Made by a program: the position numbers and the translations under genes
NCBI GenBank assembly: GCA_977020255.1
Contig: CDROCS010001101.1
Span: 62,001 to 126,000 of the forward strand
From: Obrimoposthia wandeli
Lineage: Eukaryota
Length of the DNA: 64,000 nt
Direction: 5' to 3'
In this document: positions 43,514 through 63,583 of the stretch, piece by piece
How the letters are laid out: each line of letters starts with the position of its first letter
Numbering within the stretch: position 1 is the first letter of the stretch
Notes under the pieces: model-generated
What the model saw: the letters and a program-made list of their open reading frames with translations, nothing else
Databases searched by the model: none
What the model was told of the DNA's origin: nothing

Positions 43514-45130
43514 ATGTCGAGTTTAGGTTTTAACAATAGCAATGCCATCAATTGGGCTTGGAAAGTAGATCCAGCGTCAGTTCATACACAGGATGTTGGC
43601 ATTAAAGCAGCTTTAATGGATCTGACGAATCCGCTTTACGTGGCTAATAACGCAGGTGTTACAGGTATAACGAATCATACGTCAGTAGCGGGTGCTATTA
43701 GCAATAATGTTGACGTAGATGTACTGGCATTTGCACAAAAGCTAACACCTGAAGATCTGGGTGATGATGCGTATAAGAAACAACATGGGGTTAAATACGC
43801 TTACCATGGCGGCGCTATGGCTAACGGTATTGCGTCGGTTGAACTTGTTGTCGCATTAGGTAAAGCAGGGTTGTTATGTTCGTTCGGTGCGGCAGGTTTA
43901 GTTCCTGACGCGGTTGAAGATGCTATTCGTCGTATTCAAGCTGAATTACCAAATGGCCCTTATGCGGTTAACTTGATCCATGCACCTGCAGAAGAAGCAT
44001 TAGAGCGTGGCGCGGTTGAACGTTTCCTTAAACTGGGTGTTAAGACTGTAGAGGCTTCGGCTTACCTTGGTTTAACTGAGCACATTGTTTGGTATCGTGT
44101 TGCTGGTTTATCTAAAAACAGTGATGGGTCGGTTAATATTGGTAACAAGGTTATCGCTAAAGTATCGCGTACTGAAGTTGGTCGCCGCTTTATGGAACCT
44201 GCACCGCAAAAGTTACTGGATAAGTTATTAGCACAAAACAAGATCACCCCTGAACAAGCTGCATTAGCGCTGCTTGTACCTATGGCTGATGACATTACTG
44301 CGGAAGCTGATTCTGGTGGCCATACTGATAACCGACCATTTTTAACTTTATTACCGACTATCATTGGTCTGCGTGATGAAGTGCAAGCGAAGTATAACTT
44401 CTCTCCTGCATTACGTGTTGGTGCTGGTGGTGGTATCGGAACGCCTGAAGCAGCACTCGCTGCATTTAACATGGGCGCGGCTTATATCGTTCTGGGTTCT
44501 GTGAATCAGGCATGTGTTGAAGCGGGCGCATCTGAATATACCCGTAAGCTGTTATCGACAGTTGAAATGGCCGATGTGACTATGGCACCAGCTGCTGATA
44601 TGTTTGAAATGGGCGTGAAGCTACAAGTATTAAAACGCGGTTCTATGTTCGCTATGCGTGCGAAGAAACTGTATGACTTGTATGTGACTTATGACTCGAT
44701 TGAAGATATCCCAGCTGCAGAACGTGAGAAGATTGAAAAACAAATCTTCCGTTCAAACCTAGACGAGATCTGGGATGGCACTATCGCTTTCTTCACTGAA
44801 CGCGATCCAGAAATGCTAGCCCGTGCAATGAGCAGCCCTAAACGTAAAATGGCACTTATCTTCCGTTGGTATCTTGGTCTTTCTTCACGCTGGTCAAACA
44901 CAGGCGAGAAGGGACGTGAAATGGATTATCAGATTTGGGCTGGCCCAAGTTTAGGCGCATTTAATAGCTGGGTGAAAGGTTCTTACCTTGAAGACTATAC
45001 CCGCCGCGGCGCAGTTGATGTTGCTTTGCATATGCTTAAAGGTGCTGCGTACTTACAACGTGTAAACCAGTTGAAGCTGCAAGGTGTTAGCTTAAGTACA
45101 GAATTGGCAAGTTATCGTACGAGTGATTAA
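43514..45130 (+). CDS. pfaD: PUFA synthase enoyl reductase PfaD
   Basis: GGAMANGI, TAEADSGGHTDNRP and DYQIWAGP motifs; AAGGA RBS. Confidence 0.96.
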   Translation: MSSLGFNNSNAINWAWKVDPASVHTQDVGIKAALMDLTNPLYVANNAGVTGITNHTSVAGAISNNVDVDVLAFAQKLTPEDLGDDAYKKQHGVKYAYHGGAMANGIASVELVVALGKAGLLCSFGAAGLVPDAVEDAIRRIQAELPNGPYAVNLIHAPAEEALERGAVERFLKLGVKTVEASAYLGLTEHIVWYRVAGLSKNSDGSVNIGNKVIAKVSRTEVGRRFMEPAPQKLLDKLLAQNKITPEQAALALLVPMADDITAEADSGGHTDNRPFLTLLPTIIGLRDEVQAKYNFSPALRVGAGGGIGTPEAALAAFNMGAAYIVLGSVNQACVEAGASEYTRKLLSTVEMADVTMAPAADMFEMGVKLQVLKRGSMFAMRAKKLYDLYVTYDSIEDIPAAEREKIEKQIFRSNLDEIWDGTIAFFTERDPEMLARAMSSPKRKMALIFRWYLGLSSRWSNTGEKGREMDYQIWAGPSLGAFNSWVKGSYLEDYTRRGAVDVALHMLKGAAYLQRVNQLKLQGVSLSTELASYRTSD

Positions 45131-45157
45131 TGTTGCTTGATGACATGTGAATTAATT

Positions 45158-45181
45158 AAAGCGCCTGAGGGCGCTTTTTTT
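45158..45181 (+). terminator. pfa operon terminator
   Basis: AAAGCGCC-TGAG-GGCGCTTT followed by a T run. Confidence 0.88.
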
Positions 45182-45622
45182 GATTTTTAATTTCGAATTC
45201 TAAATCAAAATAGTCCAGTTTTGCTTGGTGCATTTACTAAATCCCGATATGCATAATTTTATTATTAAAAAGTGAACCTCTAATCGGCAATACTTATTTT
45301 TAATGAAATAGGCTAAATAGTATAGTTCCATACAGTATCACTACCCTTTCCTTAAGCAGTCTCTAATTGACTGAATACAATCATGTTTATCTTGCCTGTT
45401 AAAATCAATACCAATACAATAAGTTGCATAGCTAGTCTTATTATAACTTACAAGACTAATGAAATAATTTACAGGACGTCTCGATTTGTCAGAAAAAGGC
45501 AACGAGTTAAATCCCAACATCATCTTAACTTTTAACTGTTTAGTAGATATTAGTGATGGTTATTAGGTTTGTCGATCCAAGACGTCCTATTCTAAAAAAT
45601 TAGAATTTTAAGGTTAGTCATT

Positions 45623-46498
45623 ATGAAAAAACCATCTTCTTTTTTCAAATTTGTATCCTATGAAAGAAAAGACATCCTAGAAAATGGACAAATACGATTT
45701 GCCCCAATTGGTGAGTTCAATGACCCTTTTGAGCTAGAGCCTGTGATAACACCTATTTCTAGAGAATATATTGAATTCTCTATTGGATTGTCGGAAAAAG
45801 AACAACAGGAAATAGAGTTCTCTGAGGAAGATAGTAGATACTTATCGGAAAGAGAGTTACAAGTGGATGAGTATGAAAAAATATACAAAGACAAAATCAA
45901 AAAATATGGTGTTTTTAGTTTAAGCTCTAATGCGGACATAAATCCACTTTTGACAGTATGTGTTCCTGAAAAGAAAGATCCAAGGACTAATATTTTAATG
46001 TGGTCACATTATGCCAATTCACACAAGGGCTTTATTATCGAGTTTGATAGTGATTTTATATCTGGTATCGAAATCGAAAAAGTTGAGTATAGCAACTACA
46101 GAGATTTTTTAACTTTCGAAGATATAGATGATTATGACTTTCATAAGGTTTTTTATAAAAAATCGGAAGAGTGGAAGTATGAGCAAGAATACAGAGTAGT
46201 ACTGCCATTGAGTGAGTCATCAGAGGTTAAAAATGACAAATATCACTTGTTTAATTTTAATAAAAAAAGTGTAAAGTCAATTACGTTTGGTTGTGCAATG
46301 GTTGAGTATAATAAGCAAGAGATCATGGACCTGATAGAAAATGATAAGGAATTCGGTTCTGTTTTATTTAATCACGCATTATTAAATGATGATGATTTCT
46401 GCTTACAGTTCTATCACACGACAGGAAAGTGGACCAACCATCCATCACCATTTGGTTTTAAAATGATGAGGAAAATCCCACAGCAAAAAAAAATCTAA
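45623..46498 (+). CDS. DUF2971 domain protein (cassette 1)
   Basis: IRFAPIGEFNDPFE, NILMWSHYANSHKGFIIEFD and KSEEWKYEQEYR motifs; stop codon overlaps the attC R'' box. Confidence 0.85.
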   Translation: MKKPSSFFKFVSYERKDILENGQIRFAPIGEFNDPFELEPVITPISREYIEFSIGLSEKEQQEIEFSEEDSRYLSERELQVDEYEKIYKDKIKKYGVFSLSSNADINPLLTVCVPEKKDPRTNILMWSHYANSHKGFIIEFDSDFISGIEIEKVEYSNYRDFLTFEDIDDYDFHKVFYKKSEEWKYEQEYRVVLPLSESSEVKNDKYHLFNFNKKSVKSITFGCAMVEYNKQEIMDLIENDKEFGSVLFNHALLNDDDFCLQFYHTTGKWTNHPSPFGFKMMRKIPQQKKI

Positions 46499-46595
46499 CA
46501 AGCGCTTGAAATCGGATTCAAAGTTATGCCACATTTTTTGCAAAGGCCTACAAAATAAGCACCATAACTTTTCGTCGCTTAAGCGGGCATTATGT
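46493..46595 (+). mobile_element. attC site (about 103 bp), R' core mutated to ATT
   Basis: R'' ATCTAAC; L'' CGCTT[G]AA pairs with L' TTAAGCG via an extrahelical G; inner IR AAGTTATG/CATAACTT; ends GCGGGC-ATTATGT. Confidence 0.85.
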
Positions 46596-46627
46596 TTTAT
46601 AGATTTTATTAAGGAGTAGTAGTTTCA

Positions 46628-47902
46628 ATGAATGTAATAGATGATTTTCTAGATCAATATAGTAGACAGTACGATTATTATTCTGAGCTTGCCAAAATAG
46701 GTTCTAATTTATTAGAGCTAGAGCTTGAAAAGAGAGGAATTAAGGCAATTGTTTCATTCAGAGCCAAAAGGCCTGAACGTTTAAAGTTAAAATTGGAACA
46801 AAGAAATGAGAAATCTTTATATAAAGTAGTTGAAGATATTTTTGAGGATATCGTTGATTTAGCAGGTGTTCGTGTTGCTTTATATTTCCCCAAGGATAGA
46901 GAATTAGTTGAACAAATAATAAATGATTTATTTAGTGTCAAAAAACGAAAGGTATTTCCAGAAAAAACGCATCAACCTAAGTTTGATAAGCGCTTTTCAG
47001 GGTATTGGGCTTCTCATTACAGAGTTAATATTAAAAATGCATCAAAAAATGAAAAGCGTTATGAAAGTGCTCTGTTTGAAATTCAAGTTGCATCGGTATT
47101 AATGCATGCTTGGTCAGAAGTCGAACATGATCTTGTTTATAAACCTTTTTCAGGTGATCTGTCAGAAGAAGAATATTCTATACTTGATGAAATCAATGGT
47201 CTTGTTTTGACGGGGGAGATTGCTCTTGAAAGGCTTCAAAAAGCTATAACTAAAAGAACTAAAGAGTCAGATGACATTTCAAATAGGTTTGAACTTACAA
47301 GTTTAATTACAAACTCGCTTAACAAAAACTATATAAATAAGCTGAAATTAGGTGATACAAAATTACTTTTCAATTTATTGAAAGACTCAGGTAAAGTTAG
47401 CCCACGTGATATTTCAAACTATTTGAATAAAATTAATCAAAGTGAAAAAGAAACAATTACTGATCAATTATTCACTATGATTCTTAATGATACTTTTTCT
47501 AATTCTAAAAAAGACATAAAGTTAACTAATTATTTTAAACGTTCTTTAGGTAATTTAACTGATGTTTCTGGGTTTGAATCATTTGTTAAAACCTGGATAA
47601 TATTAGAGAAGTCAGTATCAATAATTTACAGTGAAAAGAACAAACATCACAAAAAATTCTTTACTGCTAAGTTCGAACCTTTAGCGTCAGAGGGGTTGAT
47701 AACGAAGGAGGAGGCTATTGAACTTAATCACTTTAAAAGAGTTAGAAACAATTTACTTCACGGGGTCGAAACTCCAAATGACGAAGAGTTGAATGCAGGA
47801 TTCATACGTTTGATAGAATTATCAGAAAAAATAATTTCTGCTATTGAAAATGATGAAGAAAAAGAAAAATTAATGAATGCTATTAAAGTATTGCGAAGTT
47901 AA
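46628..47902 (+). CDS. RelA/SpoT (small alarmone synthetase-type) domain protein with C-terminal HEPN-like domain (cassette 2)
   Basis: SFRAK, DLAGVR, GYWASHY and EIQVASVLMHAWSEVEHDLVYK motifs; C-terminal FVKTWIILE...RVRNNLLHG. Confidence 0.8.
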   Translation: MNVIDDFLDQYSRQYDYYSELAKIGSNLLELELEKRGIKAIVSFRAKRPERLKLKLEQRNEKSLYKVVEDIFEDIVDLAGVRVALYFPKDRELVEQIINDLFSVKKRKVFPEKTHQPKFDKRFSGYWASHYRVNIKNASKNEKRYESALFEIQVASVLMHAWSEVEHDLVYKPFSGDLSEEEYSILDEINGLVLTGEIALERLQKAITKRTKESDDISNRFELTSLITNSLNKNYINKLKLGDTKLLFNLLKDSGKVSPRDISNYLNKINQSEKETITDQLFTMILNDTFSNSKKDIKLTNYFKRSLGNLTDVSGFESFVKTWIILEKSVSIIYSEKNKHHKKFFTAKFEPLASEGLITKEEAIELNHFKRVRNNLLHGVETPNDEELNAGFIRLIELSEKIISAIENDEEKEKLMNAIKVLRS

Positions 47903-47903
47903 A

Positions 47904-47948
47904 ACATAATATCTGCATATTAGAAAACGTGTTATACAGGCGTTAAAA
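47904..47948 (+). mobile_element. Internally deleted attC relic
   Basis: ACATAAT directly after the stop complements ATTATGT at the cassette start; ends AGGC-GTTAAAA; only 45 bp, with no clear L boxes. Confidence 0.55.
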
Positions 47949-47981
47949 GCACAAGTAAATTTACAATAACCTGAGAGTATA

Positions 47982-48779
47982 ATGAGTATAGAATTTTTAG
48001 AGACAGATTTTGAAAAGGTTAGTTATCTAGCAAGTTTAGTGACTGCTCATGCTACAGGGGAAGATGCATCTGATGAGGAATTTGGTCAGCTTCGTCATGA
48101 ATTATTGAGTAATAAGAACCTACAAATATTGCTTCCTAGCTGGTTAAAAGTTCATAGGAATTTGGGATCTTTTTGGGGGTATATTCAGCCCAAATTTGGC
48201 ACTTACTCTGATAGACGTAAATTTATCTCCGAAGAGTTCTCTCCTGCTTTAAGCTTATTAGAGTTCGGGCATACAGTGGAAATGCAAAAAACAGATTTAA
48301 ATGCACCTGTTCAGAGTTCACCCTTTGCACAGACATATACACGACCAAAGAAAAAGATATTCATTGTTCATGGTCGTGATAATGAATCTAAACAAGAATT
48401 GTCTCGTTATATAGAAAGTTTAGGCATTGAAGTTATTATCCTACATGAACAAGCTAGTAGCGGTATGACAATAATTGAAAAGATAGAGCATTATTCAAAT
48501 GAAGTTGATTTTGCATTTGTTCTTTATACCGCATGTGATCACGGACGAGGCATTCATGAAACTAAAGTCCATCCTAAAAATAGAGCTAGGCAAAATGTAG
48601 TCTTTGAGCATGGTTATTTAATGGCTAAATTAGGTCGAAAAAATGTTTGTGCTTTAGTCAAAGGTGAAATTGAGACACCAAACGATATTAGTGGTGTAGT
48701 TTATGTTGGTTTGGACTCCGCAGGATCTTGGAAAATGGAAGTAAATAAAGAACTTAATGCCTGTGGTTACAATATATAA
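47982..48779 (+). CDS. TIR-domain protein (CAP12/Pycsar-type TIR) with helical N-terminal domain (cassette 3)
   Basis: KIFIVHGRD, ILHEQ, TIIEKIE and RARQNVVFEHG (catalytic Glu position) motifs; ETPNDISGVVY. Confidence 0.85.
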   Translation: MSIEFLETDFEKVSYLASLVTAHATGEDASDEEFGQLRHELLSNKNLQILLPSWLKVHRNLGSFWGYIQPKFGTYSDRRKFISEEFSPALSLLEFGHTVEMQKTDLNAPVQSSPFAQTYTRPKKKIFIVHGRDNESKQELSRYIESLGIEVIILHEQASSGMTIIEKIEHYSNEVDFAFVLYTACDHGRGIHETKVHPKNRARQNVVFEHGYLMAKLGRKNVCALVKGEIETPNDISGVVYVGLDSAGSWKMEVNKELNACGYNI

Positions 48780-48795
48780 GTTCTACGTAAAGATA

Positions 48796-48911
48796 GTTTA
48801 ACAAGACGTCAGAAAGGCGTTTAAACAGGACGGAAAAAGTGGGGTAGTTTTCGATCCGCTTCGCTACACATTTTAACCAACAATTAAAAGCCTCTTAATG
48901 GGGCGTTATGC
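48796..48911 (+). mobile_element. attC site (about 116 bp) with apparent small insertion
   Basis: R'' GTTTAAC (complement matches GTTAAAA at 47942 at 6/7), AAGGCGTTTAAACAGG, CGCTTCGCTAC apex, CCTCTTAATGGGGC-GTTATGC end. Confidence 0.8.
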
Positions 48912-48937
48912 ATTAAATCGGGAACGTTTCATCTCAT

Positions 48938-49882
48938 ATGTTAAATAAAATATTTAAAAACCCACTAACTTGGTTTGTTACTTTTACTCTTGGTTTTGGT
49001 GTAGTTATATTTGGGCTGTACTTTAATAACTTCTCTGGTGAATTCAGTACTAGTCAATCAGATTGGGGGAGTTTTGGTTCATATGTTGGAGGTACAGTTG
49101 GGGCTGTATTTGCATCATTATCATTCCTAGCATTGGTGTATACCGTTTACTTACAGAGAAAAGAACTGAAATTAGCGATCGAAGCTCTTAATAAAAGTGC
49201 GGAGGCACATGAACAACAAGTAGAAAACAATAAACTTCAAAAGTTTGAATCTACATTTTATTCTCTATTGGATCTTCATAATAATGCTTTGAAAGACTTG
49301 ATGTCATCAAATTCCAAATACAAAAGTATTCCGAATCGTATTGAAGAGCACTATATATCATCAGAGCCAGAGTTCTTGAAAATAAAGCAGAAGCTAATTT
49401 TAGAAGATGAATTGCTCTCTCAGTACTTTAGGATTCTGTATCAATTACTCAAATTTGTAGCAAAAAACAACGTGAAAAACTCAGATAAACGTTTCGATGC
49501 TGTAATACTTTGTAATAAAGAATCAGTTGAAGAAAATAACAACGAAGAAAAAATGTATGTGAGTATTATTCGAGGTTTTGTACCAGTTAATTTGTTACCT
49601 GCTCTGGCGCTAAACAGTATTCCATCTTACAACTGCATAAATAATCTTGGCTTGTATTGGGAAATGTTAGAAAGGTATGAATTTTTGGAACATATTAAGC
49701 TGGAAAATCTAAATAAAGGGCTATCTGCATTTACAATCCTAAATAACTACGCATTTGCACTTGGTCATAATAATTCTATAGAAAAAAAGTACCATGAATT
49801 GAAGGAAGAAAATTTAAACTTTTGTGACTTAGAGTTAACAGAGGGGTGCTATCTTCATGTTAGATGTGAAGCTGGGATGTGA
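48938..49882 (+). CDS. Putative phage abortive-infection membrane protein, putAbiC-like (cassette 4)
   Basis: Two N-terminal TM helices with DWGSFGSYVGG; QKFESTFYSLL, SQYFRILYQLLKF and LERYEFLEH motifs. Confidence 0.75.
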   Translation: MLNKIFKNPLTWFVTFTLGFGVVIFGLYFNNFSGEFSTSQSDWGSFGSYVGGTVGAVFASLSFLALVYTVYLQRKELKLAIEALNKSAEAHEQQVENNKLQKFESTFYSLLDLHNNALKDLMSSNSKYKSIPNRIEEHYISSEPEFLKIKQKLILEDELLSQYFRILYQLLKFVAKNNVKNSDKRFDAVILCNKESVEENNNEEKMYVSIIRGFVPVNLLPALALNSIPSYNCINNLGLYWEMLERYEFLEHIKLENLNKGLSAFTILNNYAFALGHNNSIEKKYHELKEENLNFCDLELTEGCYLHVRCEAGM

Positions 49883-49884
49883 AT

Positions 49885-49939
49885 GCATAACAAATAAGAA
49901 TAGGTGTCGCGCAGCCGACACCTTATTCGGGTGTTGAAC
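49885..49939 (+). mobile_element. Short intact attC site (55 bp)
   Basis: R'' GCATAAC is the exact complement of GTTATGC at 48905; stem GAATAGGTGTCG / CGACACCTTATTC; R' GTTGAAC. Confidence 0.88.
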
Positions 49940-49994
49940 AAGTCCGAAGCCCTTCTTTATATAGTAAATAACGTGTTTGATCTTGGTGGGCACT

Positions 49995-50020
49995 TCGTCT
50001 TGGGATTAAACCCAAGACGA
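49995..50020. repeat. Perfect 10-bp inverted repeat
   Basis: TCGTCTTGGG-ATTAAA-CCCAAGACGA, with no T tract on either side. Confidence 0.75.
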
Positions 50021-50173
50021 GCGAAATTGAGATAAATAACAGACCTGTTATTTATCAATTAACTAGCTAGTTGTACCATAAATTTAATATCTCCAACTGT
50101 AATGTTAATGCCATTCTTTCTATTATGTTCGCCTTTCGGCCAAGTCGCTTATGTGATGTCCAGGTACTTAATT

Positions 50174-50305
50174 TTATGCGATAAAGTACAACGGATAACC
50201 TAAAGCAACTAAAAACACAATCCAAGAAATGCCTTCGGCAATGACATAGGCGTAAACAACGCCACAAGCGATATCTATAAGTTTTAGCGCACAAAACAGA
50301 ACTAT
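50174..50305 (-). pseudogene. Possible C-terminal fragment of a membrane protein
   Basis: Start-less 43-codon frame IVLFCALKLIDIACGVVYAYVIAEGISWIVFLVALGYPLYFIA*, hydrophobic. Confidence 0.3.
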
Positions 50306-50316
50306 TTAAAGATCTC

Positions 50317-50354
50317 AACAAGGCGATGATTTGATAATGAATTATCGCCTTGTT
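50317..50354. repeat. Perfect 11-bp inverted repeat, possibly attC-derived
   Basis: AACAAGGCGAT...ATCGCCTTGTT, with AAC and GTT termini. Confidence 0.6.
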
Positions 50355-50391
50355 ACTATCAAGAGACTGTAAATGACTGAGATAGAAAGAT

Positions 50392-51141
50392 ATGACACGG
50401 AAGAACATATTGATCACAGGCGCAAGTTCAGGGTTGGGCCGAGGTATGGCCATCGAATTTGCAAAATCAGGTCATAACTTAGCACTTTGTGCACGTAGAC
50501 TTGATAATTTAGTTGCACTGAAAGCAGAACTCTTAGCCCTCAATCCTCACATCCAAATCGAAATCAAACCTCTTGATGTCAACGAACATGAACAAGTCTT
50601 CACTGTTTTCCATGAATTCAAAGCTGAATTTGGTACGCTTGATCGTATTATTGTTAATGCTGGATTAGGCAAGGGCGGATCCGTCGGTACAGGTTTTTTC
50701 AAAGCTAATCTGCAAACAGCACAAACCAATTTTATTGCGGCGCTCGCACAGTGTGAAGCGGCGCTCGAAATTTTTAGGGCGCAAAATGCTGGGCATCTAG
50801 TAACGATTTCTTCTATCAGTGCTGTACGAGGATTCCGCCGTGCGTTAACTGTGTATGCAGCCACTAAAGCAGCACTAACATCATTAACGGAAGGCATCAG
50901 GATTGACGTGATGGATACGCCAATCAAAGTGAGTTGTGTCCATCCTGGATTTATTCGCACCGAGATGAATGAAAAAGTAAAAACAGCACCTTTCATGATA
51001 GATGCTGAAGCGGGTTGTAAAGCGATAGTGAAAGCAATTAATAAAGAAAAAGCGAATAGTTATGTACCAAGTTACCCTTGGGCTATTATGCATTTATTAC
51101 TACGTGTGGCTCCTACAAGTCTGATTCGAAAAATGAGTTAA
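50392..51141 (+). CDS. Short-chain dehydrogenase/reductase
   Basis: ITGASSGLG, NAG and YAATK motifs. Confidence 0.9.
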   Translation: MTRKNILITGASSGLGRGMAIEFAKSGHNLALCARRLDNLVALKAELLALNPHIQIEIKPLDVNEHEQVFTVFHEFKAEFGTLDRIIVNAGLGKGGSVGTGFFKANLQTAQTNFIAALAQCEAALEIFRAQNAGHLVTISSISAVRGFRRALTVYAATKAALTSLTEGIRIDVMDTPIKVSCVHPGFIRTEMNEKVKTAPFMIDAEAGCKAIVKAINKEKANSYVPSYPWAIMHLLLRVAPTSLIRKMS

Positions 51142-51177
51142 TACGCTATCGTTAAGATTATTGAGCTTGGGGTACAT

Positions 51178-51858
51178 ATGAACATCTTCTTGCATAAGTT
51201 AAATGCACATGGAAAATTTGATGGCCTTCTGACTAGGGTAGATAGTCTTTTTGATAAAGCACTCGAATGTATTGGTGAAAAACTGCCTTTGGAAGAAATT
51301 AATATTGATGTGATTATTTCTGAAGGTGACTTTGTAATACCTGAATTTGGTTTCTGTGGATACAGTCCATCATCGGGACAAATAATGTTGTTTTTTGATT
51401 TGAATAATGAAAATTTGGATACTTGTCTTGATGCCGAATTCATGCCGAGCCTTGGACATGAAATTCATCACTGCTTTCGACATAAAGGCGTTGGGTATGG
51501 TAAGACGCTTCAGGAAGCAGTAATAAGCGAAGGGTTAGCTTGCCACTTTGAAGTAGAGCTTAGGGATGGTGATGTTCCATTTTATGCACAAGCAATAAAC
51601 CAAGATATGATTGATGTCCTACATTCAAAAATGCTAAATGAAGCTGCTAATTTGACTTACGACCACAATGTTTGGTTTTTTGGGGCTGAGCCTGATTCAA
51701 TACCTTTACATGCGGGATATACATTGGGATATTATATTGTTTCAAAATATATAAAAGCAACTGGAACTCCTGCATCACAGCTATGGAATGTATCGGCAAA
51801 TGAGTTTTTTGATGGCTCTTATGCTACAGAGAATAGATTGACCTTTAAGGCATTGTAA
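51178..51858 (+). CDS. DUF2268-type predicted Zn-dependent peptidase
   Basis: HEIHH plus downstream SEGLA, and GYTLGY motif. Confidence 0.8.
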   Translation: MNIFLHKLNAHGKFDGLLTRVDSLFDKALECIGEKLPLEEINIDVIISEGDFVIPEFGFCGYSPSSGQIMLFFDLNNENLDTCLDAEFMPSLGHEIHHCFRHKGVGYGKTLQEAVISEGLACHFEVELRDGDVPFYAQAINQDMIDVLHSKMLNEAANLTYDHNVWFFGAEPDSIPLHAGYTLGYYIVSKYIKATGTPASQLWNVSANEFFDGSYATENRLTFKAL

Positions 51859-51961
51859 TTTAAGTTTAATATGGTCTTTAAGATAGGTATTAAATTGGAA
51901 TTTTATTGGTGTTATACGAGATTTCATATAACAGCTGTCAGTAGAGAATAAGGTATGTGGT

Positions 51962-52543
51962 ATGAATTGGTTATCCGAATCCCAACTAAAAGGTAATTAC
52001 GTTACTCTAGAACCACTGGGTATTGAACACCTTGATGAACTAAAAGAGGCCGTTTTGGATGGCGAATCTTGGAAGTTATGGTATGCAAATGTTCCGTCCC
52101 CTGAACGAATGAGTGAATATGTAAGAGAAGCTATTACAGAATCAAAGAAAGGTAATATTGCATTTGCGATAAGATGTAATAATACAAATAAAGTTGTAGG
52201 AACCAGCAGGTTTTATAACGTCGATGCTAAAAATAAGCGGGCGATGTTAGGCTATACATGGTATTCATCGTCAGTGCGACGATCACCAGTTAATACAGAG
52301 TGCAAATTACTTTTACTCTTGCACGTTTTTGAAAAGCATTCTGCAATAGCTGTTGAGTTTAGAACTCACTTCTTTAACCAAAGTTCTAGAAAAGCTATAG
52401 AAAGGCTAGGAGCTAAGCAAGATGGTATTATTCGAAACCATCAAATTTTAAAAGATGGCTCTATTAGAGATACAGTTGTTTACTCAATTATTAATTCTGA
52501 GTGGCCAGCGGTAAAAAACAATTTGCAGAGTAAGCTCGGCTAA
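51962..52543 (+). CDS. GNAT acetyltransferase, RimJ/RimL-like
   Basis: VTLEPL, LGYTWY and SRKAIERLGAKQDG motifs; stop lies within GGCTAAC. Confidence 0.88.
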   Translation: MNWLSESQLKGNYVTLEPLGIEHLDELKEAVLDGESWKLWYANVPSPERMSEYVREAITESKKGNIAFAIRCNNTNKVVGTSRFYNVDAKNKRAMLGYTWYSSSVRRSPVNTECKLLLLLHVFEKHSAIAVEFRTHFFNQSSRKAIERLGAKQDGIIRNHQILKDGSIRDTVVYSIINSEWPAVKNNLQSKLG

Positions 52544-52725
52544 CAAAAATTTATTATGGGCATTTTCTAATCATGGTGAAAATTATCAGCTTATGAATGT
52601 TAGTAACTGTTATTGATATGTCGTAGGGCTCAACAAATAATAGATTTCGGTTCGCTACGTAAAATCTAGCGAACTAACTCCCAACTTTTTCTCATGACAA
52701 CTAATCGGAAACTGTCATATCTATC

Positions 52726-53751
52726 CTACATTGGGAGCAAAATGATTTTCCCATGTATAGGTGTAGATTTAGACTCAATAAGTTCAATAGCGGATTGAAC
52801 TTGATCTAATGGAATACAGCGGTCTACATCTAGTTGTATCTTATTGATTATGAAATGGTCTAACATCATCGTAAATTTTTCACGTCTGACATCTTTACCA
52901 ACCGTGTTTTCCCAGTAACGTAAGAAAAATGTACTGAAATCGATATTCTGGTTTTTCGCATATTCATAAAAACGAGGCTCATAAAATTCCAGTGAAAGAG
53001 TTCCATAGTTGATATACCGACCCTTGATACCCACGGTATGAATCAGTTCAGTGCCCACTTTGCCTCCAATAGCATCAAATGCTACATTGGGTCTAGGCAA
53101 ATTGCGCTGTTGAATTTGAGTAATTAGATCACCTTTAGCATCTATGACAATGCTTGAATCATATGCATAAGTTTCAGGTTTTGAAGTTACAACAAGAAGA
53201 GTAAACCCCAGCGATGAAGATAACTGCGCAAAAATCTTACCTATAGCAGAACTACCTGCATTGACAATCAGTACATCATCTCTTGTCAACTGAGCGACTT
53301 CTGTGGTCAAAACCCAAGCTGTTAACGCATTAATATATAATTGGCATGCGTAGCCGTTTTCCAGATGGTGAGGAATATGAAAGAGGTTATCTGGTGATAC
53401 ATCGATATATTTCTGCCAAGTACCACTGGTAGCCACAACGACTCTTTGACCTATGATAAATTTTTCATGGTTAGACTCGATGACTTGCCCGACGGCTTCG
53501 AATCCAGGAACTCTGGGTGGCTGATGACTATGCCGATATTGACCTATGCCATGAATAGACAACAGATCGCTTGGGTTAATATTTGTAGCTTCGATTTTGA
53601 CCCTAATGTTATCTTTTTCAAGCGATTCCAACGGTAAATGCTCTACCGTCAATGAGTCCTTTGGGTGCCCGAAACAGATCTGGTTAATTCTTGTATTTGT
53701 CGTGGTGTCAGTCATCTCTTGACCATAAGTGGTTGAATTATTAACTTGCAT
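52726..53751 (-). CDS. MDR-family (quinone/enoyl reductase-like) oxidoreductase
   Basis: INPSDL, VPGFEAVG, NAGSSAIG and GKIILL motifs. Start may be the ATG at 53715. Confidence 0.85.
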   Translation of the reverse strand: MQVNNSTTYGQEMTDTTTNTRINQICFGHPKDSLTVEHLPLESLEKDNIRVKIEATNINPSDLLSIHGIGQYRHSHQPPRVPGFEAVGQVIESNHEKFIIGQRVVVATSGTWQKYIDVSPDNLFHIPHHLENGYACQLYINALTAWVLTTEVAQLTRDDVLIVNAGSSAIGKIFAQLSSSLGFTLLVVTSKPETYAYDSSIVIDAKGDLITQIQQRNLPRPNVAFDAIGGKVGTELIHTVGIKGRYINYGTLSLEFYEPRFYEYAKNQNIDFSTFFLRYWENTVGKDVRREKFTMMLDHFIINKIQLDVDRCIPLDQVQSAIELIESKSTPIHGKIILLPM

Positions 53752-54182
53752 CTAGGTATACTGGCGTTTTTTATCGTGAATGTCCATCTCTATACTTACC
53801 AGTGATGTGGCTCACTTTTTCCCCTTTTTACGTTAGAGTTGCTACTCACTCAAAATATGTTCATATCGGTTTGCCATAGATTTTCTAATTTCACATGATT
53901 TGCAAGAATGAATCTAAAACGGTGTCCAGTATTACTTAATCACTTCATTCCTGTTTGTAAACGGTAGTAGCCAAAATATGAACGAAGTTATTCTAGAAAA
54001 GAAAATATTTTGATGAACTGCATAGGTCGACCCATGAAATCATCCTACATCGATGACTTTATCTTAAAATTAAGAATGCTACGAAGAAAGCCAATTTCAA
54101 TAAGTCACTACAATTTATAAGATAGTGTGTAAATTTTTCTTTGACTATGCCAAAATCACAAACAATAAATTCGTAAAAGGAT

Positions 54183-54974
54183 ATGTACATGGTTGATGGT
54201 CAACTAATTATGCCTAAAGGTAATGTGATAAAACATCAATGGATAAGCTCATTTTTCCTTCTTGGTAAAACTACTCGTGATTATTGGTTATATGTTCCTA
54301 AACAATATGACCCTGAAACACCGATTGGTTTAATGGTATTCCAAGACGGTGAGGAATACGTGGATGAGAATGGCTGTTTCAAAGCACCTCAAGTATTTGA
54401 TGAATTAATCCATAAAGAAGCAATACCACCTATCATTGGATTATTCGTAAACTCAGGGCATAACGCCAACGTGCCTAGCCCAAAATCACATTGGGAATCT
54501 AGCTTTCGTAGTTATGAATATGATTCACTAGGAGATGAGTACACAAGATTCCTAATTGAGGAACTAATACCTGAAATAGGTAAAGAATATAACCTCACTA
54601 ATAACCCTAAGATGAGAGCTATATGCGGAATGTCATCAGGAGGCATCTGTGCATTTACAGCAGCATGGGAACGCCCCGATTACTTTCATAAGGTAATGAG
54701 TCACATTGGAAGTTTTACCGATATTAGAGGCGGTCATGTTTATCCCAATCTAGTTCGTAAATCTTCTAAAAAGGACATTAAGGTATTTTTACAAGATGGC
54801 AGCAACGACCTTGATATTCATTTTGGTAATTGGTGGTTAAGTAATTTACAAATGGAAAGTGCTCTTAAATTTAAGGGGTATATTCATAAATTTGTTGGTG
54901 GTACTGGAGGGCATGACGGGAAACATGGTGGTTCTATTTTTGCTGAATCATTGATGTGGCTTTGGGGGGAATAA
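54183..54974 (+). CDS. Alpha/beta-hydrolase esterase (enterochelin-esterase-like)
   Basis: LMVFQDG, GMSSGG nucleophile elbow and GGHDGKHG motifs. Confidence 0.85.
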   Translation: MYMVDGQLIMPKGNVIKHQWISSFFLLGKTTRDYWLYVPKQYDPETPIGLMVFQDGEEYVDENGCFKAPQVFDELIHKEAIPPIIGLFVNSGHNANVPSPKSHWESSFRSYEYDSLGDEYTRFLIEELIPEIGKEYNLTNNPKMRAICGMSSGGICAFTAAWERPDYFHKVMSHIGSFTDIRGGHVYPNLVRKSSKKDIKVFLQDGSNDLDIHFGNWWLSNLQMESALKFKGYIHKFVGGTGGHDGKHGGSIFAESLMWLWGE

Positions 54975-55226
54975 CATCAAATAAATACTTCAGATGAATA
55001 TAAATTATATATTCAAGTAGCCAAAATTATATACCCGTAGCGGTCTTAGGATCCCAATAATAGCCCGTACCTGTTGAAGGACGAAATTGACCGCAGGTTA
55101 TGGTTAATCGGGGGGAGAATCAAATAGACTGTTTACTTCCCCTACAAATCATTGTGTTAAGTGGTTAAATTGAATTTTATTGTCATAGTGAAATACGTGT
55201 GATGGCGCCATTAATAGGTTAGGAAA

Positions 55227-55796
55227 ATGGAACTAAAACTACAGCAATTAATTAAGTCGGTTCCAGAGTTAATGGAAACAGCTGAAGCGTGCAGAGATGT
55301 TGGTTTGCCTAATTTCTACATTGCTGGCGGTGCGATTACTCAATTAATTTGGAACAGCTTGGATGAAAAAGAGTTGCTCGATAAAGTCAAAGATTTTGAC
55401 ATTGTTTATTTTGATAAGACCAATACTGTTTCAGAAGAGTCTTTTGAAAGAAGTATTGCTAAACGTATACGGCATTGTGTCAAAGTGGATCTTAAGAATC
55501 AAGCTACAATGCATGAGCGATATGTCCAAAGGTTTGGTTGCTCAATCCTAGCATATGTTCGTGTGGAACAAGGTATTGAGTCTTGGTTACCTGCGTTTGC
55601 TATAGGCTTTACCCTTGACTCTTATGGAAATATAACTATCTATGCTCCTTATGGTTTGGAAGATGCTTTCAGTATGTTAGTGAAACCTAATAAGCGAGCA
55701 ATGACAGAGAGCAATTACAACAACATGACCGCTGGCTATAAGGCTCGTTGGCCGAAAGTAAAGGTGCTCCCATGGAATCCATCTGCTAATAAATGA
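55227..55796 (+). CDS. Nucleotidyltransferase family protein (DUF925-like), cassette
   Basis: IAGGAITQLIWN, KDFDIVYFD, KNQATMH and APYGLED motifs; preceded by GTTAGGA and running into an attC. Confidence 0.8.
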   Translation: MELKLQQLIKSVPELMETAEACRDVGLPNFYIAGGAITQLIWNSLDEKELLDKVKDFDIVYFDKTNTVSEESFERSIAKRIRHCVKVDLKNQATMHERYVQRFGCSILAYVRVEQGIESWLPAFAIGFTLDSYGNITIYAPYGLEDAFSMLVKPNKRAMTESNYNNMTAGYKARWPKVKVLPWNPSANK

Positions 55797-55911
55797 CTTA
55801 AGAGTGATTCGTAACGCGTAGCATTTTTACTATGTGTTTGGTTAAGCTAGTAAGGTGGTGTTTAATGGCTAGGGTATCAGTAAGTTATTCACTTAATGGC
55901 AAGGGTTAATA
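55784..55911 (+). mobile_element. Long Vibrio-type attC (128 bp), R'' mutated to AAT
   Basis: TGCTAAT-AAATGACTTAAGAGTGATTCGTAACGCGTAGCATTTTTACTATG...TAAGGTGGT...CACTTAATGGCAAGG-GTTAATA resembles Vibrio superintegron repeats (from recall). Confidence 0.8.
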
Positions 55912-56188
55912 TTACAGACGCATCAATAAAATTTTAAGGCTATAAAATTGATGAAGTCTCATGTCTGGTTCAAGGCCGGCATAGTTATCATATATGACTC
56001 ATCTTAGATGCCTCTCCTCATCGTCATCATACAATCAATTAGCTTGGTCCCAAGATGGTTATTGTTTCAAACTCGATAATAAAGCGTATTGACTCCTCCA
56101 AGGGGCTCCGTAATAAATTAGTGTAAATAATGGTACTTGAAAATTCAGATGCAGTAGACTCGAATAAACAGTGATTTAGGAAGTAGAT

Positions 56189-57034
56189 ATGATACTGACA
56201 GCATTAATTGATAATACTCGATTAGATGATAGAACAGACCTTGCGGTTGAGAGAGGGCTATCTTTTCACATAAAAACGATGGGGCAAGAAATTCTATTTG
56301 ATGCTGGTAGCAGTAAAGCTTTTTGTGATAATGCTATTTTATTAGGTATTAAGATGGAAGATGTAGATGCTGCCATTATTTCACATCGTCATCATGACCA
56401 CTGTAATGGTGTAACGCATTTCCTCGACCGTAATTCTAAGGCTCAGGTCTATTTTCGCGAGTGTGCAGAAACTGATTATAGTTTTAAAGCGTTTGGCTTC
56501 AAAAGTAATGTCGGTATTGATAAGACCCTATTAGATAAAGACCGTAGACGATTCACCTTCATTGATAAAACCACTGAGATAAGTCCAAATATTTTTATCA
56601 TTACAAGTATTAGTCGTAAGTATGATCAACCAAAAGGTAATAAATATCTGTTTACTGATTCAGGTGATGGCTGTAAACCAGACACTTTTGATCATGAGCT
56701 ACTCTTAGTTATTAAAGAAGATGATGGTCTTATCGTATTTACTGGTTGTGCTCATAGCGGTGTACTTAATATGATTGAAACCGCGATTGAATTGTTTCCG
56801 AACACCAGAATTAAAGCTGTTGTCGGTGGATTTCATTTGGTCGGGTTACCTTTGTTTAATAGCATTGGCGGAACTAAGAAAGACATTGAAGCAATCGGTG
56901 AAACCATGCTCACTTATCCAATCGATAAGCTCTATACTGGCCATTGTACTGGCATGAAAGCCTATGAAATATTAAAAGACGTACTTGGTGATACCCTTGA
57001 GTACTTCCCAACTGGGCGTCGTATCACTATCTAA
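56189..57034 (+). CDS. Metallo-beta-lactamase-fold hydrolase
   Basis: ILFDAG, SHRHHDH (HxHxDH), TGCAHSG, GGFHL and GHCTG motifs. Confidence 0.88.
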   Translation: MILTALIDNTRLDDRTDLAVERGLSFHIKTMGQEILFDAGSSKAFCDNAILLGIKMEDVDAAIISHRHHDHCNGVTHFLDRNSKAQVYFRECAETDYSFKAFGFKSNVGIDKTLLDKDRRRFTFIDKTTEISPNIFIITSISRKYDQPKGNKYLFTDSGDGCKPDTFDHELLLVIKEDDGLIVFTGCAHSGVLNMIETAIELFPNTRIKAVVGGFHLVGLPLFNSIGGTKKDIEAIGETMLTYPIDKLYTGHCTGMKAYEILKDVLGDTLEYFPTGRRITI

Positions 57035-57109
57035 TTAAAAACACCCTAATGACTTAGTCTGCCAATTCAATGCTACCTTTATAGTAAACAAACACATAAG
57101 GGCATTGAA

Positions 57110-57730
57110 ATGGATTTTGATTGGGTAGAGTGGTTTGGTTATCTCGCATCGTTAGTTGTACTCGTGTCCCTTACTATGACGTCAATTATCAAGCTGCGGG
57201 TCATTAACTTCATTGGCTGTATTCTATTTGCGATATTTGCCTATTTTATTGATTCCTTACCGACCATGTTAATGAACCTAGGGATAGCCGGCATCAATGT
57301 TTACTTCTTATGGAAAATTCATTCGACCGAGGAACAGTTCAAACTGATTGTGGCAGCGGTTCATTCTGAATATTTTGAGCATTTCATAGCAACAAACCTA
57401 AGTGACATTGAACGCCAAACCACAGTAGATGAACTTCGAGAAGCCAATACGGTGTTTTATATGCTCAGGAATAACAGTATAGCGGGTGTACTAGCCGGGA
57501 ATAATAATGCACAAGGCGAACTGTCAGTGTTACTGGACTTTGTTACACCTGAATTCCGTGATTTTAAGTTGGCGGATTATTACTATAAGTCTCACCCTGA
57601 TGTACTCAAACACAGGGGGGTCAATACACTGATTGCTAAAGCTACGACACCGGAACATAGAGACTACTTACTCAAAGTGGGTTTTCAGGTTGCTGGTGGC
57701 TTTGAAGGTGTTTATCAGAAACAGCTTTAA
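57110..57730 (+). CDS. YgjV-like membrane protein
   Basis: Three N-terminal TM helices (GYLASLVVLVSLTM..LRVINFIG) followed by a soluble C-terminal domain. Confidence 0.7.
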   Translation: MDFDWVEWFGYLASLVVLVSLTMTSIIKLRVINFIGCILFAIFAYFIDSLPTMLMNLGIAGINVYFLWKIHSTEEQFKLIVAAVHSEYFEHFIATNLSDIERQTTVDELREANTVFYMLRNNSIAGVLAGNNNAQGELSVLLDFVTPEFRDFKLADYYYKSHPDVLKHRGVNTLIAKATTPEHRDYLLKVGFQVAGGFEGVYQKQL

Positions 57731-57853
57731 GGGTGCTAGCTAGTATCCTCCTACCTCGTTCAGATTTACTTAACTCTAGGTTAACTTCATTCTAATATTC
57801 TTAACTTACAGTGAGGGGTATACTCTCGGCTCTTAGAAAGGGAGAGCCAAAAC

Positions 57854-58042
57854 ATGTTTGAATTCGTTACTAATTCCTCATTAAAAACACACCTATCACT
57901 ACCGGCTTATTGTGTCTTACGCCGCAGCTTCTCTAATGACAATGCTGTGCGCTCTAAGGCTGATCATATCAGTCCAGGAGCAAAGGCGGACAATCGTATA
58001 GATCACTATACTCGTAGCATGATGGTGCAAGCTGCAGCTTAA
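57854..58042 (+). CDS. Hypothetical 62-aa ORF
   Basis: GGAGAG RBS-like sequence upstream; no recognised motif. Confidence 0.3.
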   Translation: MFEFVTNSSLKTHLSLPAYCVLRRSFSNDNAVRSKADHISPGAKADNRIDHYTRSMMVQAAA

Positions 58043-58116
58043 TTTAAACGCCTGCCTAGGTATTTGACCATTAAAAAAACACATCACATTAACCGATGTA
58101 AACAGGGAACATCCCC

Positions 58117-61597: not shown

Positions 61598-61611
61598 CCT
61601 GTGCGCGAATG

Positions 61612-61687
61612 AAAGGCTAATAGAACAAAGGCTAATAGAACAAAGGCTAATAGATCGAAGGTTAACAGATTGAAAGGTTAATAGGAT
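61612..61687. repeat. 15-bp tandem repeat, 5 copies
   Basis: AAAGGCTAATAGAAC x2, AAAGGCTAATAGATC, GAAGGTTAACAGATTG, AAAGGTTAATAGGAT. Confidence 0.9.
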
Positions 61688-61696
61688 ACCGTAATT

Positions 61697-63553: not shown

Positions 63554-63583
63554 ACCATTTTTGACTACACTTTATCTTCCGAT

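What the first reader, a model, noticed from the sequence alone, without database searches (positions are those of the whole stretch)
45613..55911. Integrase-less integron cassette array with anti-phage-like cargo parked at the 3' end of the pfa operon
Seen: attC sites at 46493-46595, 48796-48911, 49885-49939 and 55784-55911, and relics at 47904, 50317, 51864-51917, 52538, 52628 and about 55200. Each follows a same-strand AT-rich ORF, and cassette-start TTRRRY sequences complement the same cassette's R'' box. The attCs are of four unrelated lengths (about 103, 116, 55 and 128 bp), and there is no intI. Knowledge: integron cassettes are known reservoirs of phage-defence genes. Inference: a defence hotspot assembled from several donor integrons, whose first four cassettes (DUF2971, RelA/SpoT-HEPN, NTD-TIR, putAbiC) are candidate undescribed single-gene defences.
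Basis: partly seen in the sequence, partly recalled or inferred. Interest (0 to 1): 0.85.

Follow-up and report, generated by a model that had tools for sequence, protein, structure and literature searches.

The report
Decayed integron cassette array beside pfaD

Summary
The core observation holds. These are 46493-46595 (30.9 bits), 48796-48911 (44.3 bits) and 55784-55911 (18.7 bits).

A fourth attC survives as a 44-nt relic at 47905-47948.

The "55-bp attC" at 49885-49939 is a chimera. Only GCATAAC belongs to the putAbiC cassette. The rest is the attC-like end of an inserted unit (IS91-family transposase plus tyrosine recombinase in other genomes), of which only about 300 bp remain here.

The relics at 50317, 51864, 52538, 52628 and about 55200 are not supported. 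The 50317 hairpin is native DNA upstream of a conserved SDR gene.

So there is a four-cassette, integrase-less array at about 45613-49891 (DUF2971, RelA/SpoT-HEPN, TIR, putAbiC) and a separate single cassette at about 55.2-55.9 kb. It is not one 10-kb array.

Homologues of three of the four genes are attC-flanked cassettes elsewhere, two of them with the same cassette boundaries. Several core sites are mutated, so the array looks immobilised.

The defence role is inferred. DUF2971 has a validated relative (Aristaios), and three proteins match PADLOC candidate families, one only weakly. This is a new member of a known kind.

The parts
43514..45130 (+). pfaD, last gene of the pfa operon (context; left neighbour of the array)
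   Evidence: 96% aa identity to pfaD of Moritella sp. JT01. Nucleotide homology to JT01 stops at 45131.
45158..45177 (+). terminator-like hairpin plus T run after pfaD
   Evidence: It argues against read-through from pfaD as the source of cassette expression (inference).
45613..45619 (+). possible start of cassette 1 (GTTAGTC); the left boundary is unresolved
   Evidence: 5 of 7 bases complementary to R'' ATCTAAC. No attC or attI-like half-site in 45131-45640. Homology to a 69% identical homologue (L183) starts at 45602.
45623..46498 (+). cassette 1 gene: DUF2971 protein, 291 aa
   Evidence: Pfam DUF2971 1.8e-6; PADLOC PDC-S31 2.3e-35. Distant homologues are attC-flanked in L197 and L199.
46493..46595 (+). 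attC 1, 103 nt; R'' ATCTAAC overlaps the stop codon; R' ATTATGT carries G to A at the invariant G
   Evidence: R1 30.9 bits, E 2e-5. Both half-sites are significant. The bottom strand folds as a long imperfect hairpin.
46628..47902 (+). cassette 2 gene: RelA/SpoT-type synthetase fused to a HEPN-like domain, 424 aa (the cassette starts at TTATGT, 46590)
   Evidence: Pfam RelA_SpoT 2.5e-14, weak HepT-like 0.0047. The model has pLDDT 85, and its N-terminal domain matches RelP/RelQ with target-normalised TM 0.7. The synthetase motifs and R373-N-x-L-L-H378 are conserved in 38 homologues. The homologue cassette in L104 is flanked by GTTATGT and ACATAAC, and L123 (cut inside the gene) has ACATAAC after the stop.
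47905..47948 (+). attC 2 relic, 44 nt: R'' ACATAAT (C to T), internal deletion, 3' half ending in GGCGTTAAAA
   Evidence: Half-site score 13.4, expected 0.006. Compared with the intact 92-nt attC of L123.
47982..48779 (+). cassette 3 gene: N-terminal domain plus CAP12/Pycsar-type TIR domain, 265 aa
   Evidence: Pfam PF10137 7.3e-39; PADLOC PDC-S35 3.3e-75. Homologues on Vibrio and Photobacterium plasmids and on viral contigs have no RelA/SpoT neighbour.
48796..48911 (+). attC 3, 116 nt; R'' GTTTAAC, R' GTTATGC; the L'' half pairs poorly
   Evidence: R1 44.3 bits, E 1e-8. The 3' half is 77-83% identical to repeated attC ends of a Pseudoalteromonas array.
48938..49882 (+). cassette 4 gene: putAbiC-family membrane protein, 314 aa (the cassette starts at TTATGC, 48906)
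   Evidence: Pfam putAbiC 3e-8. Homologues are 89% identical in Pseudoalteromonas arrays and 51% identical as attC-flanked cassettes in V. cholerae and V. vulnificus, with the same GTTATGC start in V. cholerae and Pseudoalteromonas.
49885..49891 (+). R'' box GCATAAC, all that is left of attC 4
   Evidence: Exact complement of GTTATGC at 48905-48911. V. cholerae has the same R'', and Colwellia has GCATACC followed by a full attC.
49892..50200 (.). remnant end of an attC-targeting unit (IS91-family transposase plus tyrosine recombinase elsewhere). Its first 48 nt form an attC-like hairpin ending in GTTGAAC
   Evidence: No transposase or second end in the window.
50269..51151 (+). conserved SDR gene with its own upstream region, including the 50317-50354 hairpin; not a cassette
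   Evidence: 97% nt identity to contigs L223-225 over exactly this span. 75-79% aa identity across Alteromonadales.
55227..55796 (+). separate cassette gene: NTP_transf_6 nucleotidyltransferase, 189 aa
   Evidence: Pfam PF06042 1.4e-37.
55784..55911 (+). attC 5, 128 nt, VCR-like and decayed; R'' TGCTAAT (C to T), R' GTTAATA
   Evidence: R1 18.7 bits, E 0.026 over the whole window and 0.005 over the region. 85% identity over 41 nt to a V. cholerae repeat.

Best explanation
Bases 45613-49891 are a fossil, integrase-less integron cassette array (CALIN) of four single-gene cassettes abutting the 3' end of pfaD. The genes are a DUF2971 ADP-ribosyltransferase-like protein, a RelA/SpoT synthetase fused to a HEPN-like domain, a CAP12-type TIR protein, and a putAbiC membrane protein.

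Each cassette was originally a unit that an integron integrase moves by recombination at its attC. That origin is shown by a model-detected attC, by conserved cassette boundaries, or by attC-flanked homologues in other genomes.

The array is now stranded and decaying (shown). No intI or attI is present. R' of attC1 is G to A. attC2 has a C to T change and an internal deletion. The L'' half of attC3 pairs poorly. attC4 was cut after its R'' box by an attC-targeting unit, most of which was later deleted, together with whatever followed, up to the native SDR gene at 50269.

A separate decayed cassette (NTP_transf_6 with a VCR-like attC) lies at about 55.2-55.9 kb in a further variable segment.

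The function of the four genes as independent single-gene abortive-infection or anti-phage modules is inferred from family membership. The likely activities are ADP-ribosylation, nucleotide pyrophosphokinase plus RNase, NAD+ hydrolysis, and membrane damage.
For: attC calls at the exact coordinates with a model trained on other genomes, backed by an independent half-site test.

Cassette boundaries are conserved across genomes. TTATGC...GCATAAC flanks the putAbiC gene in the window and in V. cholerae, Pseudoalteromonas shares the GTTATGC start, and homology breaks upstream of GTTATGC. TTATGT...ACATAAC flanks the RelA/SpoT-HEPN gene in the window and in L104, and L123 shares the ACATAAC R''.

Homologues sit inside attC arrays: L096, L101, L098, L123, L197, L199.

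The inserted unit is defined.

The genes do not depend on each other: none of 80 RelA/SpoT-HEPN loci holds a TIR homologue, and none of 13 TIR loci holds a RelA/SpoT homologue.

Literature: integron cassettes are defence reservoirs (bioRxiv 10.1101/2024.07.02.601686), and the DUF2971 protein Aristaios protects against phage (PMC11381338).
Against: No phage assay exists for any of the four proteins. The PADLOC PDC families are unvalidated candidates, and the PDC-S33 match of the RelA/SpoT protein is weak (1.8e-8).

The left boundary of cassette 1 is not defined, and no attI is recognisable.

Model R1 is biased towards long Vibrio- and Alteromonadales-type attC sites, so short or decayed sites between 50 and 55 kb could have been missed. 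Its E-values are rough, and its Pseudoalteromonas training sites were found through a homologue of a window gene.

No promoter signal stands above chance, so expression is unknown.

The rest of the genome was not available, so an IntI elsewhere cannot be excluded.
Confidence: 0.8

Rival explanations
1. One reading: one continuous cassette array from 45613 to 55911, in which SDR, DUF2268, GNAT, ADH, esterase and NTP_transf_6 are all cassettes with decayed attC sites.
For: Most of these genes are on the same strand. The GNAT stop lies in GGCTAACAAAAA..., which resembles the 5' end of a short Pseudoalteromonas attC (28 nt, E 0.008). Bases 51152-57531 are absent from a close relative. R1 is insensitive to short attC sites.
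Against: No significant attC or half-site lies in any spacer between 50.4 and 55.2 kb. The SDR gene and its upstream hairpin are conserved, native-like DNA. ADH is on the opposite strand with a 430-bp upstream region. Only 36 nt separate SDR from DUF2268.
Confidence: 0.08
2. The array is still active: an integron integrase encoded elsewhere in the genome excises and reshuffles these cassettes in trans.
For: attC3 keeps canonical R'' and R' boxes. An earlier scan note (s1-229448) reports other integrase-less cassette platforms 37 kb upstream, so cassette traffic has occurred in this genome.
Against: The invariant G of R'(1) and the invariant C of R''(2) and R''(5) are mutated. attC2 lost about 50 nt. 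attC4 is truncated. The L'' half of attC3 does not pair. No intI was found in the 64-kb window.
Confidence: 0.1
3. The cargo is not anti-phage. The genes are addiction or toxin modules, or stress enzymes, that persist because they are costly to lose or are neutral leftovers.
For: Toxin-antitoxin cassettes are common in chromosomal integrons (seen in L096). The RelA/SpoT-HEPN protein resembles a fused toxin-antitoxin. No assay exists, and the array is decaying.
Against: All four ORFs are intact, while their attC sites have decayed. Catalytic motifs are conserved. Two proteins match PADLOC defence-candidate families strongly. A DUF2971 relative is a validated antiphage gene (PMC11381338). Homologues occur on prophage or viral contigs and in defence-type neighbourhoods.
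Confidence: 0.2
4. The attC-like sites are chance palindromes in an ordinary AT-rich genomic island.
For: Two of the sites (48796-48911 and 55784-55911) show no better-than-random fold energy (z about 0). AT-rich DNA is full of GTTA and TAAC.
Against: Model E-values are 1e-8 and 2e-5 at the exact predicted coordinates. There is sequence homology to attC repeats of real arrays, and the cassette boundaries are conserved in other genomes.
Confidence: 0.02

Closest known systems
[quoted passage not shown]
   Same: At least two attC sites on one strand, each following a promoterless-looking ORF. No intI nearby. Cassettes are shared with true integrons in Vibrio.
   Different: Heavily decayed: mutated core triplets, one collapsed attC and one truncated attC. 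It is wedged directly against a housekeeping operon (pfaD), and its attC types are heterogeneous.
Defence cassettes of sedentary chromosomal integrons (V. cholerae superintegron 'biobank'; bioRxiv 10.1101/2024.07.02.601686)
   Same: Small single-gene defence-type cargo carried as cassettes. The putAbiC cassette has a 51% identical counterpart inside V. cholerae and V. vulnificus arrays.
   Different: No integrase and no uniform species-specific attC. None of the four genes corresponds to a system named in that study as far as a term search showed.
Aristaios (lactococcal single-gene DUF2971 antiphage system; PMC11381338)
   Same: Cassette 1 encodes a protein of about 300 aa with the DUF2971 domain. 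That domain is described as an ADP-ribosyltransferase fold (PMC11381338, PMC12522546).
   Different: The only link is the shared Pfam family. Direct similarity to Aristaios was not tested. The host phylum and genetic context are different.
CapRel and other toxic small alarmone synthetases; HepT/MntA (HEPN-MNT) toxin-antitoxin pairs
   Same: Cassette 2 has a complete RelP/RelQ-like synthetase fold (Foldseek also lists CapRel, E 2.8e-4). It is fused to a C-terminal regulatory or effector domain, which carries the HEPN Rx4H motif.
   Different: The C-terminal domain is HEPN-like, not the pseudo-zinc-finger antitoxin of CapRel. The nucleotidyltransferase is RelA/SpoT-type and fused, not a separate MNT protein.
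attC-targeting mobile elements (IS1111-attC group, group IIC-attC introns; from my own knowledge)
   Same: The unit at 49892 sits inside attC sites at a fixed position (after the YAAC of R'') in many genomes.
   Different: It encodes an IS91-family transposase plus a tyrosine recombinase and ends in its own attC-like hairpin. I found no description of it in the searchable library.

Membership tests
integron attC site / gene cassette | R'' (RYYYAAC) and R' (GTTRRRY) core boxes at the two ends | tested here: met
   attC1 ATCTAAC / ATTATGT (G to A); attC3 GTTTAAC / GTTATGC; attC5 TGCTAAT (C to T) / GTTAATA; attC2 relic ACATAAT / GTTAAAA. The boxes are present, but three of them carry a transition at an invariant base.
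integron attC site / gene cassette | Detection by a structure-plus-sequence model of attC | tested here: met
In the control scan of 1.49 Mb, most of the strong hits fell in ORF-attC arrays. IntegronFinder's own model was not available.
integron attC site / gene cassette | L''/L' pairing with extrahelical bases on the '' arm of the folded bottom strand | tested here: inconclusive
   attC1 pairs CGCTT/AAGCG plus AA/TT with a 2-nt bulge on the '' side. The L'' half of attC3 is marked non-pairing by cmsearch, and its fold z-score is 0. attC5 is only partly paired.
integron attC site / gene cassette | Cassette start TTRRRY complementary to the cassette's own R'', with boundaries conserved in other genomes | tested here: met
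   Cassette 4: TTATGC / GCATAAC in the window and V. cholerae, with the GTTATGC start also in Pseudoalteromonas. Cassette 2: TTATGT / ACATAAC in the window and L104, with the ACATAAC R'' also in L123. Cassettes 1 and 3 match at 5 of 7 and 6 of 7 bases.
integron attC site / gene cassette | Recombination by an integron integrase | not testable with these tools
   Needs an excision or integration assay with IntI.
CALIN | At least two attC sites with no integron integrase nearby | tested here: met
   There are two full attC sites, one relic and one truncated site within 3.4 kb. pfaD lies upstream. No integrase was found among the tested ORFs of the window.
complete integron | intI gene, attI site and Pc promoter next to the first cassette | tested here: not met
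   Bases 45131-45622 hold only the pfaD terminator and AT-rich DNA. There is no half-site, no similarity in phage records or earlier scan notes, and no promoter signal above chance.
Aristaios / DUF2971 defence | DUF2971 (ART-like) domain in a single protein of about 300 aa | tested here: met
   Pfam 1.8e-6 and PADLOC PDC-S31 2.3e-35 over residues 3-263.
Aristaios / DUF2971 defence | Protection against phage | not testable with these tools
   Needs plaque assays.
CapRel-type fused toxic alarmone synthetase | toxSAS domain plus C-terminal pseudo-zinc-finger antitoxin/sensor domain | tested here: not met
   The synthetase fold is present (RelP target-normalised TM 0.72; CapRel 7ztb E 2.8e-4 but TM about 0.3). 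The C-terminal domain is all-helical with a conserved R-N-x-L-L-H motif, so it is HEPN-like.
CBASS Cap12 / Pycsar PycTIR effector | TIR effector encoded next to a cyclase (CD-NTase or pyrimidine cyclase) | tested here: not met
   The TIR domain is present (7.3e-39). The neighbours are unrelated cassettes. NCBIfam Cap12 scores are far below cutoff (27 against 450 bits).
lactococcal AbiC-type abortive infection protein | putAbiC domain (PF16872) plus N-terminal membrane segment | tested here: met
   Pfam 3e-8 over residues 158-257. A hydrophobic N-terminus is visible in the translation of 48938 onward. No PADLOC AbiC hit, only a weak AbiP hit.

The most novel reading that the evidence does not exclude
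The 424-aa RelA/SpoT-HEPN protein of cassette 2 represents an uncharacterised, widespread single-polypeptide abortive-infection family that travels as an integron cassette. In this family a small-alarmone-synthetase-type pyrophosphokinase is coupled in cis to a HEPN RNase. One domain would gate or license the other, like a fused version of MNT-HEPN or CapRel logic.
Probability: 0.35. Interest if true: 0.65.

Novelty: new member of a known kind. Interest (0 to 1): 0.45.

Why it matters
The finding shows how integron cassettes end up as fixed chromosomal genes. An array loses its integrase, its recombination sites decay by point mutation, deletion and insertion, and the open reading frames stay intact. 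That pattern suggests selection for the cargo.

It also gives four compact candidate defence genes for cold-adapted marine bacteria. One of them, the RelA/SpoT-HEPN protein, belongs to a large family that I could not find characterised in the searchable literature.

Finally, it exposes a mobile unit that homes to attC sites, including those of clinical class 1 integrons.

The general principle, integrase-less arrays and cassettes as defence reservoirs, is already established.

Tried and rejected
- Exact-sequence look-ups of pfaD, the TIR protein and the putAbiC protein found nothing on record.
- The single genome-contig scan returned only one Moritella (JT01), so a within-genus comparison was not possible.
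- The phage database had no match to the array or to the pfaD-cassette 1 spacer.
- I looked for the second end and the transposase of the inserted unit in the window and found none.
- I considered the 50311-50360 hairpin as the missing remainder of attC4. I rejected this because it is conserved upstream of SDR in a relative that lacks the array.
- I considered ORF2 plus ORF3 as a two-gene signalling system. I rejected this because homologues never co-occur and a collapsed attC lies between them.
- I considered 58162-58183, a strong attC 3' half-site, as the end of the array. I rejected this because it lies inside ccoN coding sequence.
- The single-sequence structure model of ORF2 was unusable (pLDDT 45). 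The alignment-based model was good, but only the N-terminal domain produced PDB matches.
- Promoter scanning was uninformative.
- Literature searches for PDC-S31/33/35, for RelA/SpoT-HEPN fusions and for the IS91-plus-recombinase attC-targeting unit returned nothing specific.

Full report
**Setting.** The window carries pfaA-D on the + strand, with pfaD at 43514-45130. Its product is 96% identical to pfaD of Moritella sp. JT01. GC content drops from 0.40-0.46 in pfa to 0.29-0.36 between 45.0 and 50.0 kb. Four same-strand ORFs fill that stretch. Nucleotide homology to JT01 ends exactly at the pfaD stop. JT01 has unrelated metabolic genes downstream and no attC.

**Gene content.**

| Coordinates | Strand | Assignment |
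|---|---|---|
| 45623-46498 | + | DUF2971; PADLOC candidate PDC-S31, 2e-35 |
| 46628-47902 | + | RelA_SpoT 2.5e-14, plus a weak HepT-like hit; weak PDC-S33 |
| 47982-48779 | + | CAP12/Pycsar-type TIR, 7e-39; PDC-S35, 3e-75 |
| 48938-49882 | + | putAbiC, 3e-8 |
| 50392-51141 | + | SDR |
| 51178-51858 | + | DUF2268 |
| 51962-52543 | + | GNAT |
| 52726-53751 | - | Zn-ADH |
| 54183-54974 | + | esterase |
| 55227-55796 | + | NTP_transf_6 |
| 56189-57034 | + | MBL-fold protein |

None of the tested ORFs in the window is an integrase.

**Testing the attC claim.** IntegronFinder's model was not available, so I collected genuine attC sites from elsewhere. Homologues of the putAbiC protein led to three sources:
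- a V. cholerae superintegron contig (L096), with classical VCR repeats;
- Pseudoalteromonas arrays (L091-095);
- an E. coli class 1 integron (L084), which supplied the attC sites of aadA2 and cmlA1.

Fifteen sites, none from the window, were aligned. I annotated the R-box and L-box pairs, which most of the sequences satisfy, and built covariance model R1.

Searching the whole window gave four hits:

| Coordinates | Strand | Bits | E-value | Comment |
|---|---|---|---|---|
| 40360-40398 | - | 16.1 | 0.12 | inside pfaC, taken as a false positive |

A half-site weight matrix built from 30 foreign sites agreed. It also showed that scores of about 15-18 can arise inside coding sequence, for example in ccoN at 58162. 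In 1.49 Mb of control loci, most of the strong hits fell in evident ORF-attC arrays.

**The collapsed site between ORF2 and ORF3.** The half-site matrix finds an attC 3' half at 47927-47948, ending in GGCGTTAAAA, with 0.006 expected by chance in that spacer.

A metagenome contig with an 85% identical ORF2 homologue (L123) has an intact 92-nt attC directly after the stop, beginning TAAAACATAAC. The window reads TAAAACATAAT and lacks about 50 nt of the interior.

A 66% identical homologue (L104) is preceded by an attC ending in GTTATGT and followed by one starting ACATAAC. The window's cassette 2 is likewise bounded by ATTATGT (46589-46595) and ACATAAT. ORF2 is therefore a single-gene cassette whose boundaries recur in independent contexts. 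In the window both invariant bases have mutated: G of GTT in R'(1) and C of AAC in R''(2).

**The putAbiC cassette.** Homology to the 89% identical Pseudoalteromonas gene, and to the V. cholerae cassette, begins at GGCGTTATGC. Upstream of that, each of the three genomes has a different attC. V. cholerae and the window share the R'' GCATAAC. The homologue is attC-flanked in V. cholerae, V. vulnificus and Colwellia.

**The "55-bp attC".** Bases 49892 to about 50200 are 76-95% identical to non-coding sequence found in 16 plasmids, directly after a YAAC box in all eight aligned copies. In an E. coli IncC plasmid and a Photobacterium plasmid, this sequence is the end of a unit that encodes an IS91-family transposase and a tyrosine recombinase.

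In E. coli the unit splits attC of aadA1 between GTCTAAC and AATTCG. Its other end reads ...GTTCAAC, followed by the remainder of attC(aadA1). Its first 48 nt form a hairpin with compensatory changes between copies and end in GTTGAAC, the complement of GTTCAAC. The unit therefore carries its own attC-like site and sits in inverted orientation at the R'' box.

In the window only this end survives, with no transposase and no second end. R1 gives it 8.9 bits.

**Right-hand limit of the array.** Metagenome contigs from a close relative (SDR 99% aa, 97% nt) match the window only from 50269 to 51151. They then jump to 57532-57753 and to 63675-64000. The 50317-50354 hairpin is inside this conserved block, so it is not an attC relic.

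The SDR gene is 75-79% identical across Alteromonadales. No spacer between 50.4 and 55.2 kb has a significant attC or half-site. The GNAT stop region weakly resembles a short attC 5' end, which leaves a small chance of further decayed cassettes.

**Function (inference).** The four genes do not depend on one another. None of 80 ORF2 loci holds a TIR homologue, and none of 13 TIR loci holds an ORF2 homologue.

- **DUF2971.** This family has been assigned to DarT-like ADP-ribosyltransferases (PMC12522546). One member, Aristaios, is a validated abortive-infection gene (PMC11381338).
- **ORF2.** An alignment-based model (pLDDT 85) shows a RelP/RelQ-like synthetase domain followed by a helical domain. 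Across 38 homologues the synthetase motifs are invariant, and R373-N-x-L-L-H378, which fits the HEPN Rx4H signature, is at least 90% conserved. The likeliest mechanism is a fused toxin with two activities, pyrophosphokinase and RNase, released on infection. Which domain controls which is unknown.
- **TIR protein.** It probably depletes NAD+.
- **putAbiC protein.** It is a membrane protein of the AbiC type.

**Verdict.** This is a real but decayed CALIN of four defence-type cassettes, followed by the stump of an attC-targeting element, and then a separate solitary cassette 5 kb further on. The phenomenon is known (IntegronFinder's CALIN class; integron cassettes as defence reservoirs, bioRxiv 10.1101/2024.07.02.601686). 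The finding is a new member of a known kind, with one cargo family worth experimental follow-up.

Noticed in passing
window 49892-50200; L084:3010-5347; L083:5001-7290; also L081, L082, L085, L086, L087: A mobile unit (IS91-family transposase plus tyrosine recombinase) ends in an attC-like hairpin. In its own orientation it starts with TTGAAC and ends with GTTCAAC-hairpin. It sits directly after the YAAC of an R'' box, which in several copies immediately follows a gene's stop codon. The copies are in Vibrio, Photobacterium, Shewanella, Pseudoalteromonas, Salinivibrio, Proteus/Providencia and an E. coli class 1 integron, where it splits attC of aadA1. Many copies are about 300-bp stumps. I found no description in the searchable literature.
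   Followed up: partly
L015:16035-20862, L007:15623-19287, L057:13228-13311, L075:18979-19093, L004:5242-5350, L060-L062: attC sites, either arrays or single cassettes, occur within 10 kb downstream of pfaD in Colwellia, Shewanella, Motilimonas, Psychrobium and Photobacterium. The Colwellia array starts 4.4 kb from pfaD and truncates a TonB-receptor gene. No proper background control was possible, so enrichment at this locus is unproven.
   Followed up: partly
window 52649-52683; L090:1426-1459 and 18969-18997: A 34-nt hairpin-containing repeat (TTCGCTACGTRAAATCTAGCGAACTAACTCCCA) is shared at 97% identity with two places on Moritella sp. 24 plasmid pMR24b. Its function is unknown.
   Followed up: partly
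window 51152-57531 and 57754-63674 versus L223-L225: A close relative (97% nt identity over the SDR block) lacks both segments, including the cbb3-oxidase/sulfite-dehydrogenase operon. It retains only the 3' end of the 206-aa gene at 57110-57730. The whole zone downstream of pfaD is therefore plastic.
   Followed up: partly
L087:3010-3070, 4300-4360, 4905-4965 (Moritella sp. 24 pMR24b): A repeat of about 55 bp, preceded in two of its three copies by GTTATG, follows several small same-strand genes on this plasmid. GCATAAC-GCAT-GTTATGC mini-palindromes also occur. This may be a Moritella-specific cassette-like system.
   Followed up: no
L098-L100 (Colwellia contigs): The 73% identical putAbiC homologue sits in a defence-island-like neighbourhood together with a DUF2971 homologue, HEPN_RiboL-PSP, FRG and Endonuclease_1 genes. 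It keeps a recognisable attC (6270-6364).
   Followed up: no
window 40360-40398 (-) and 58162-58183 (+): These attC-model and half-site hits lie inside the pfaC and ccoN coding sequence. They are useful as examples of false positives at 16-18 bits or score units.
   Followed up: yes
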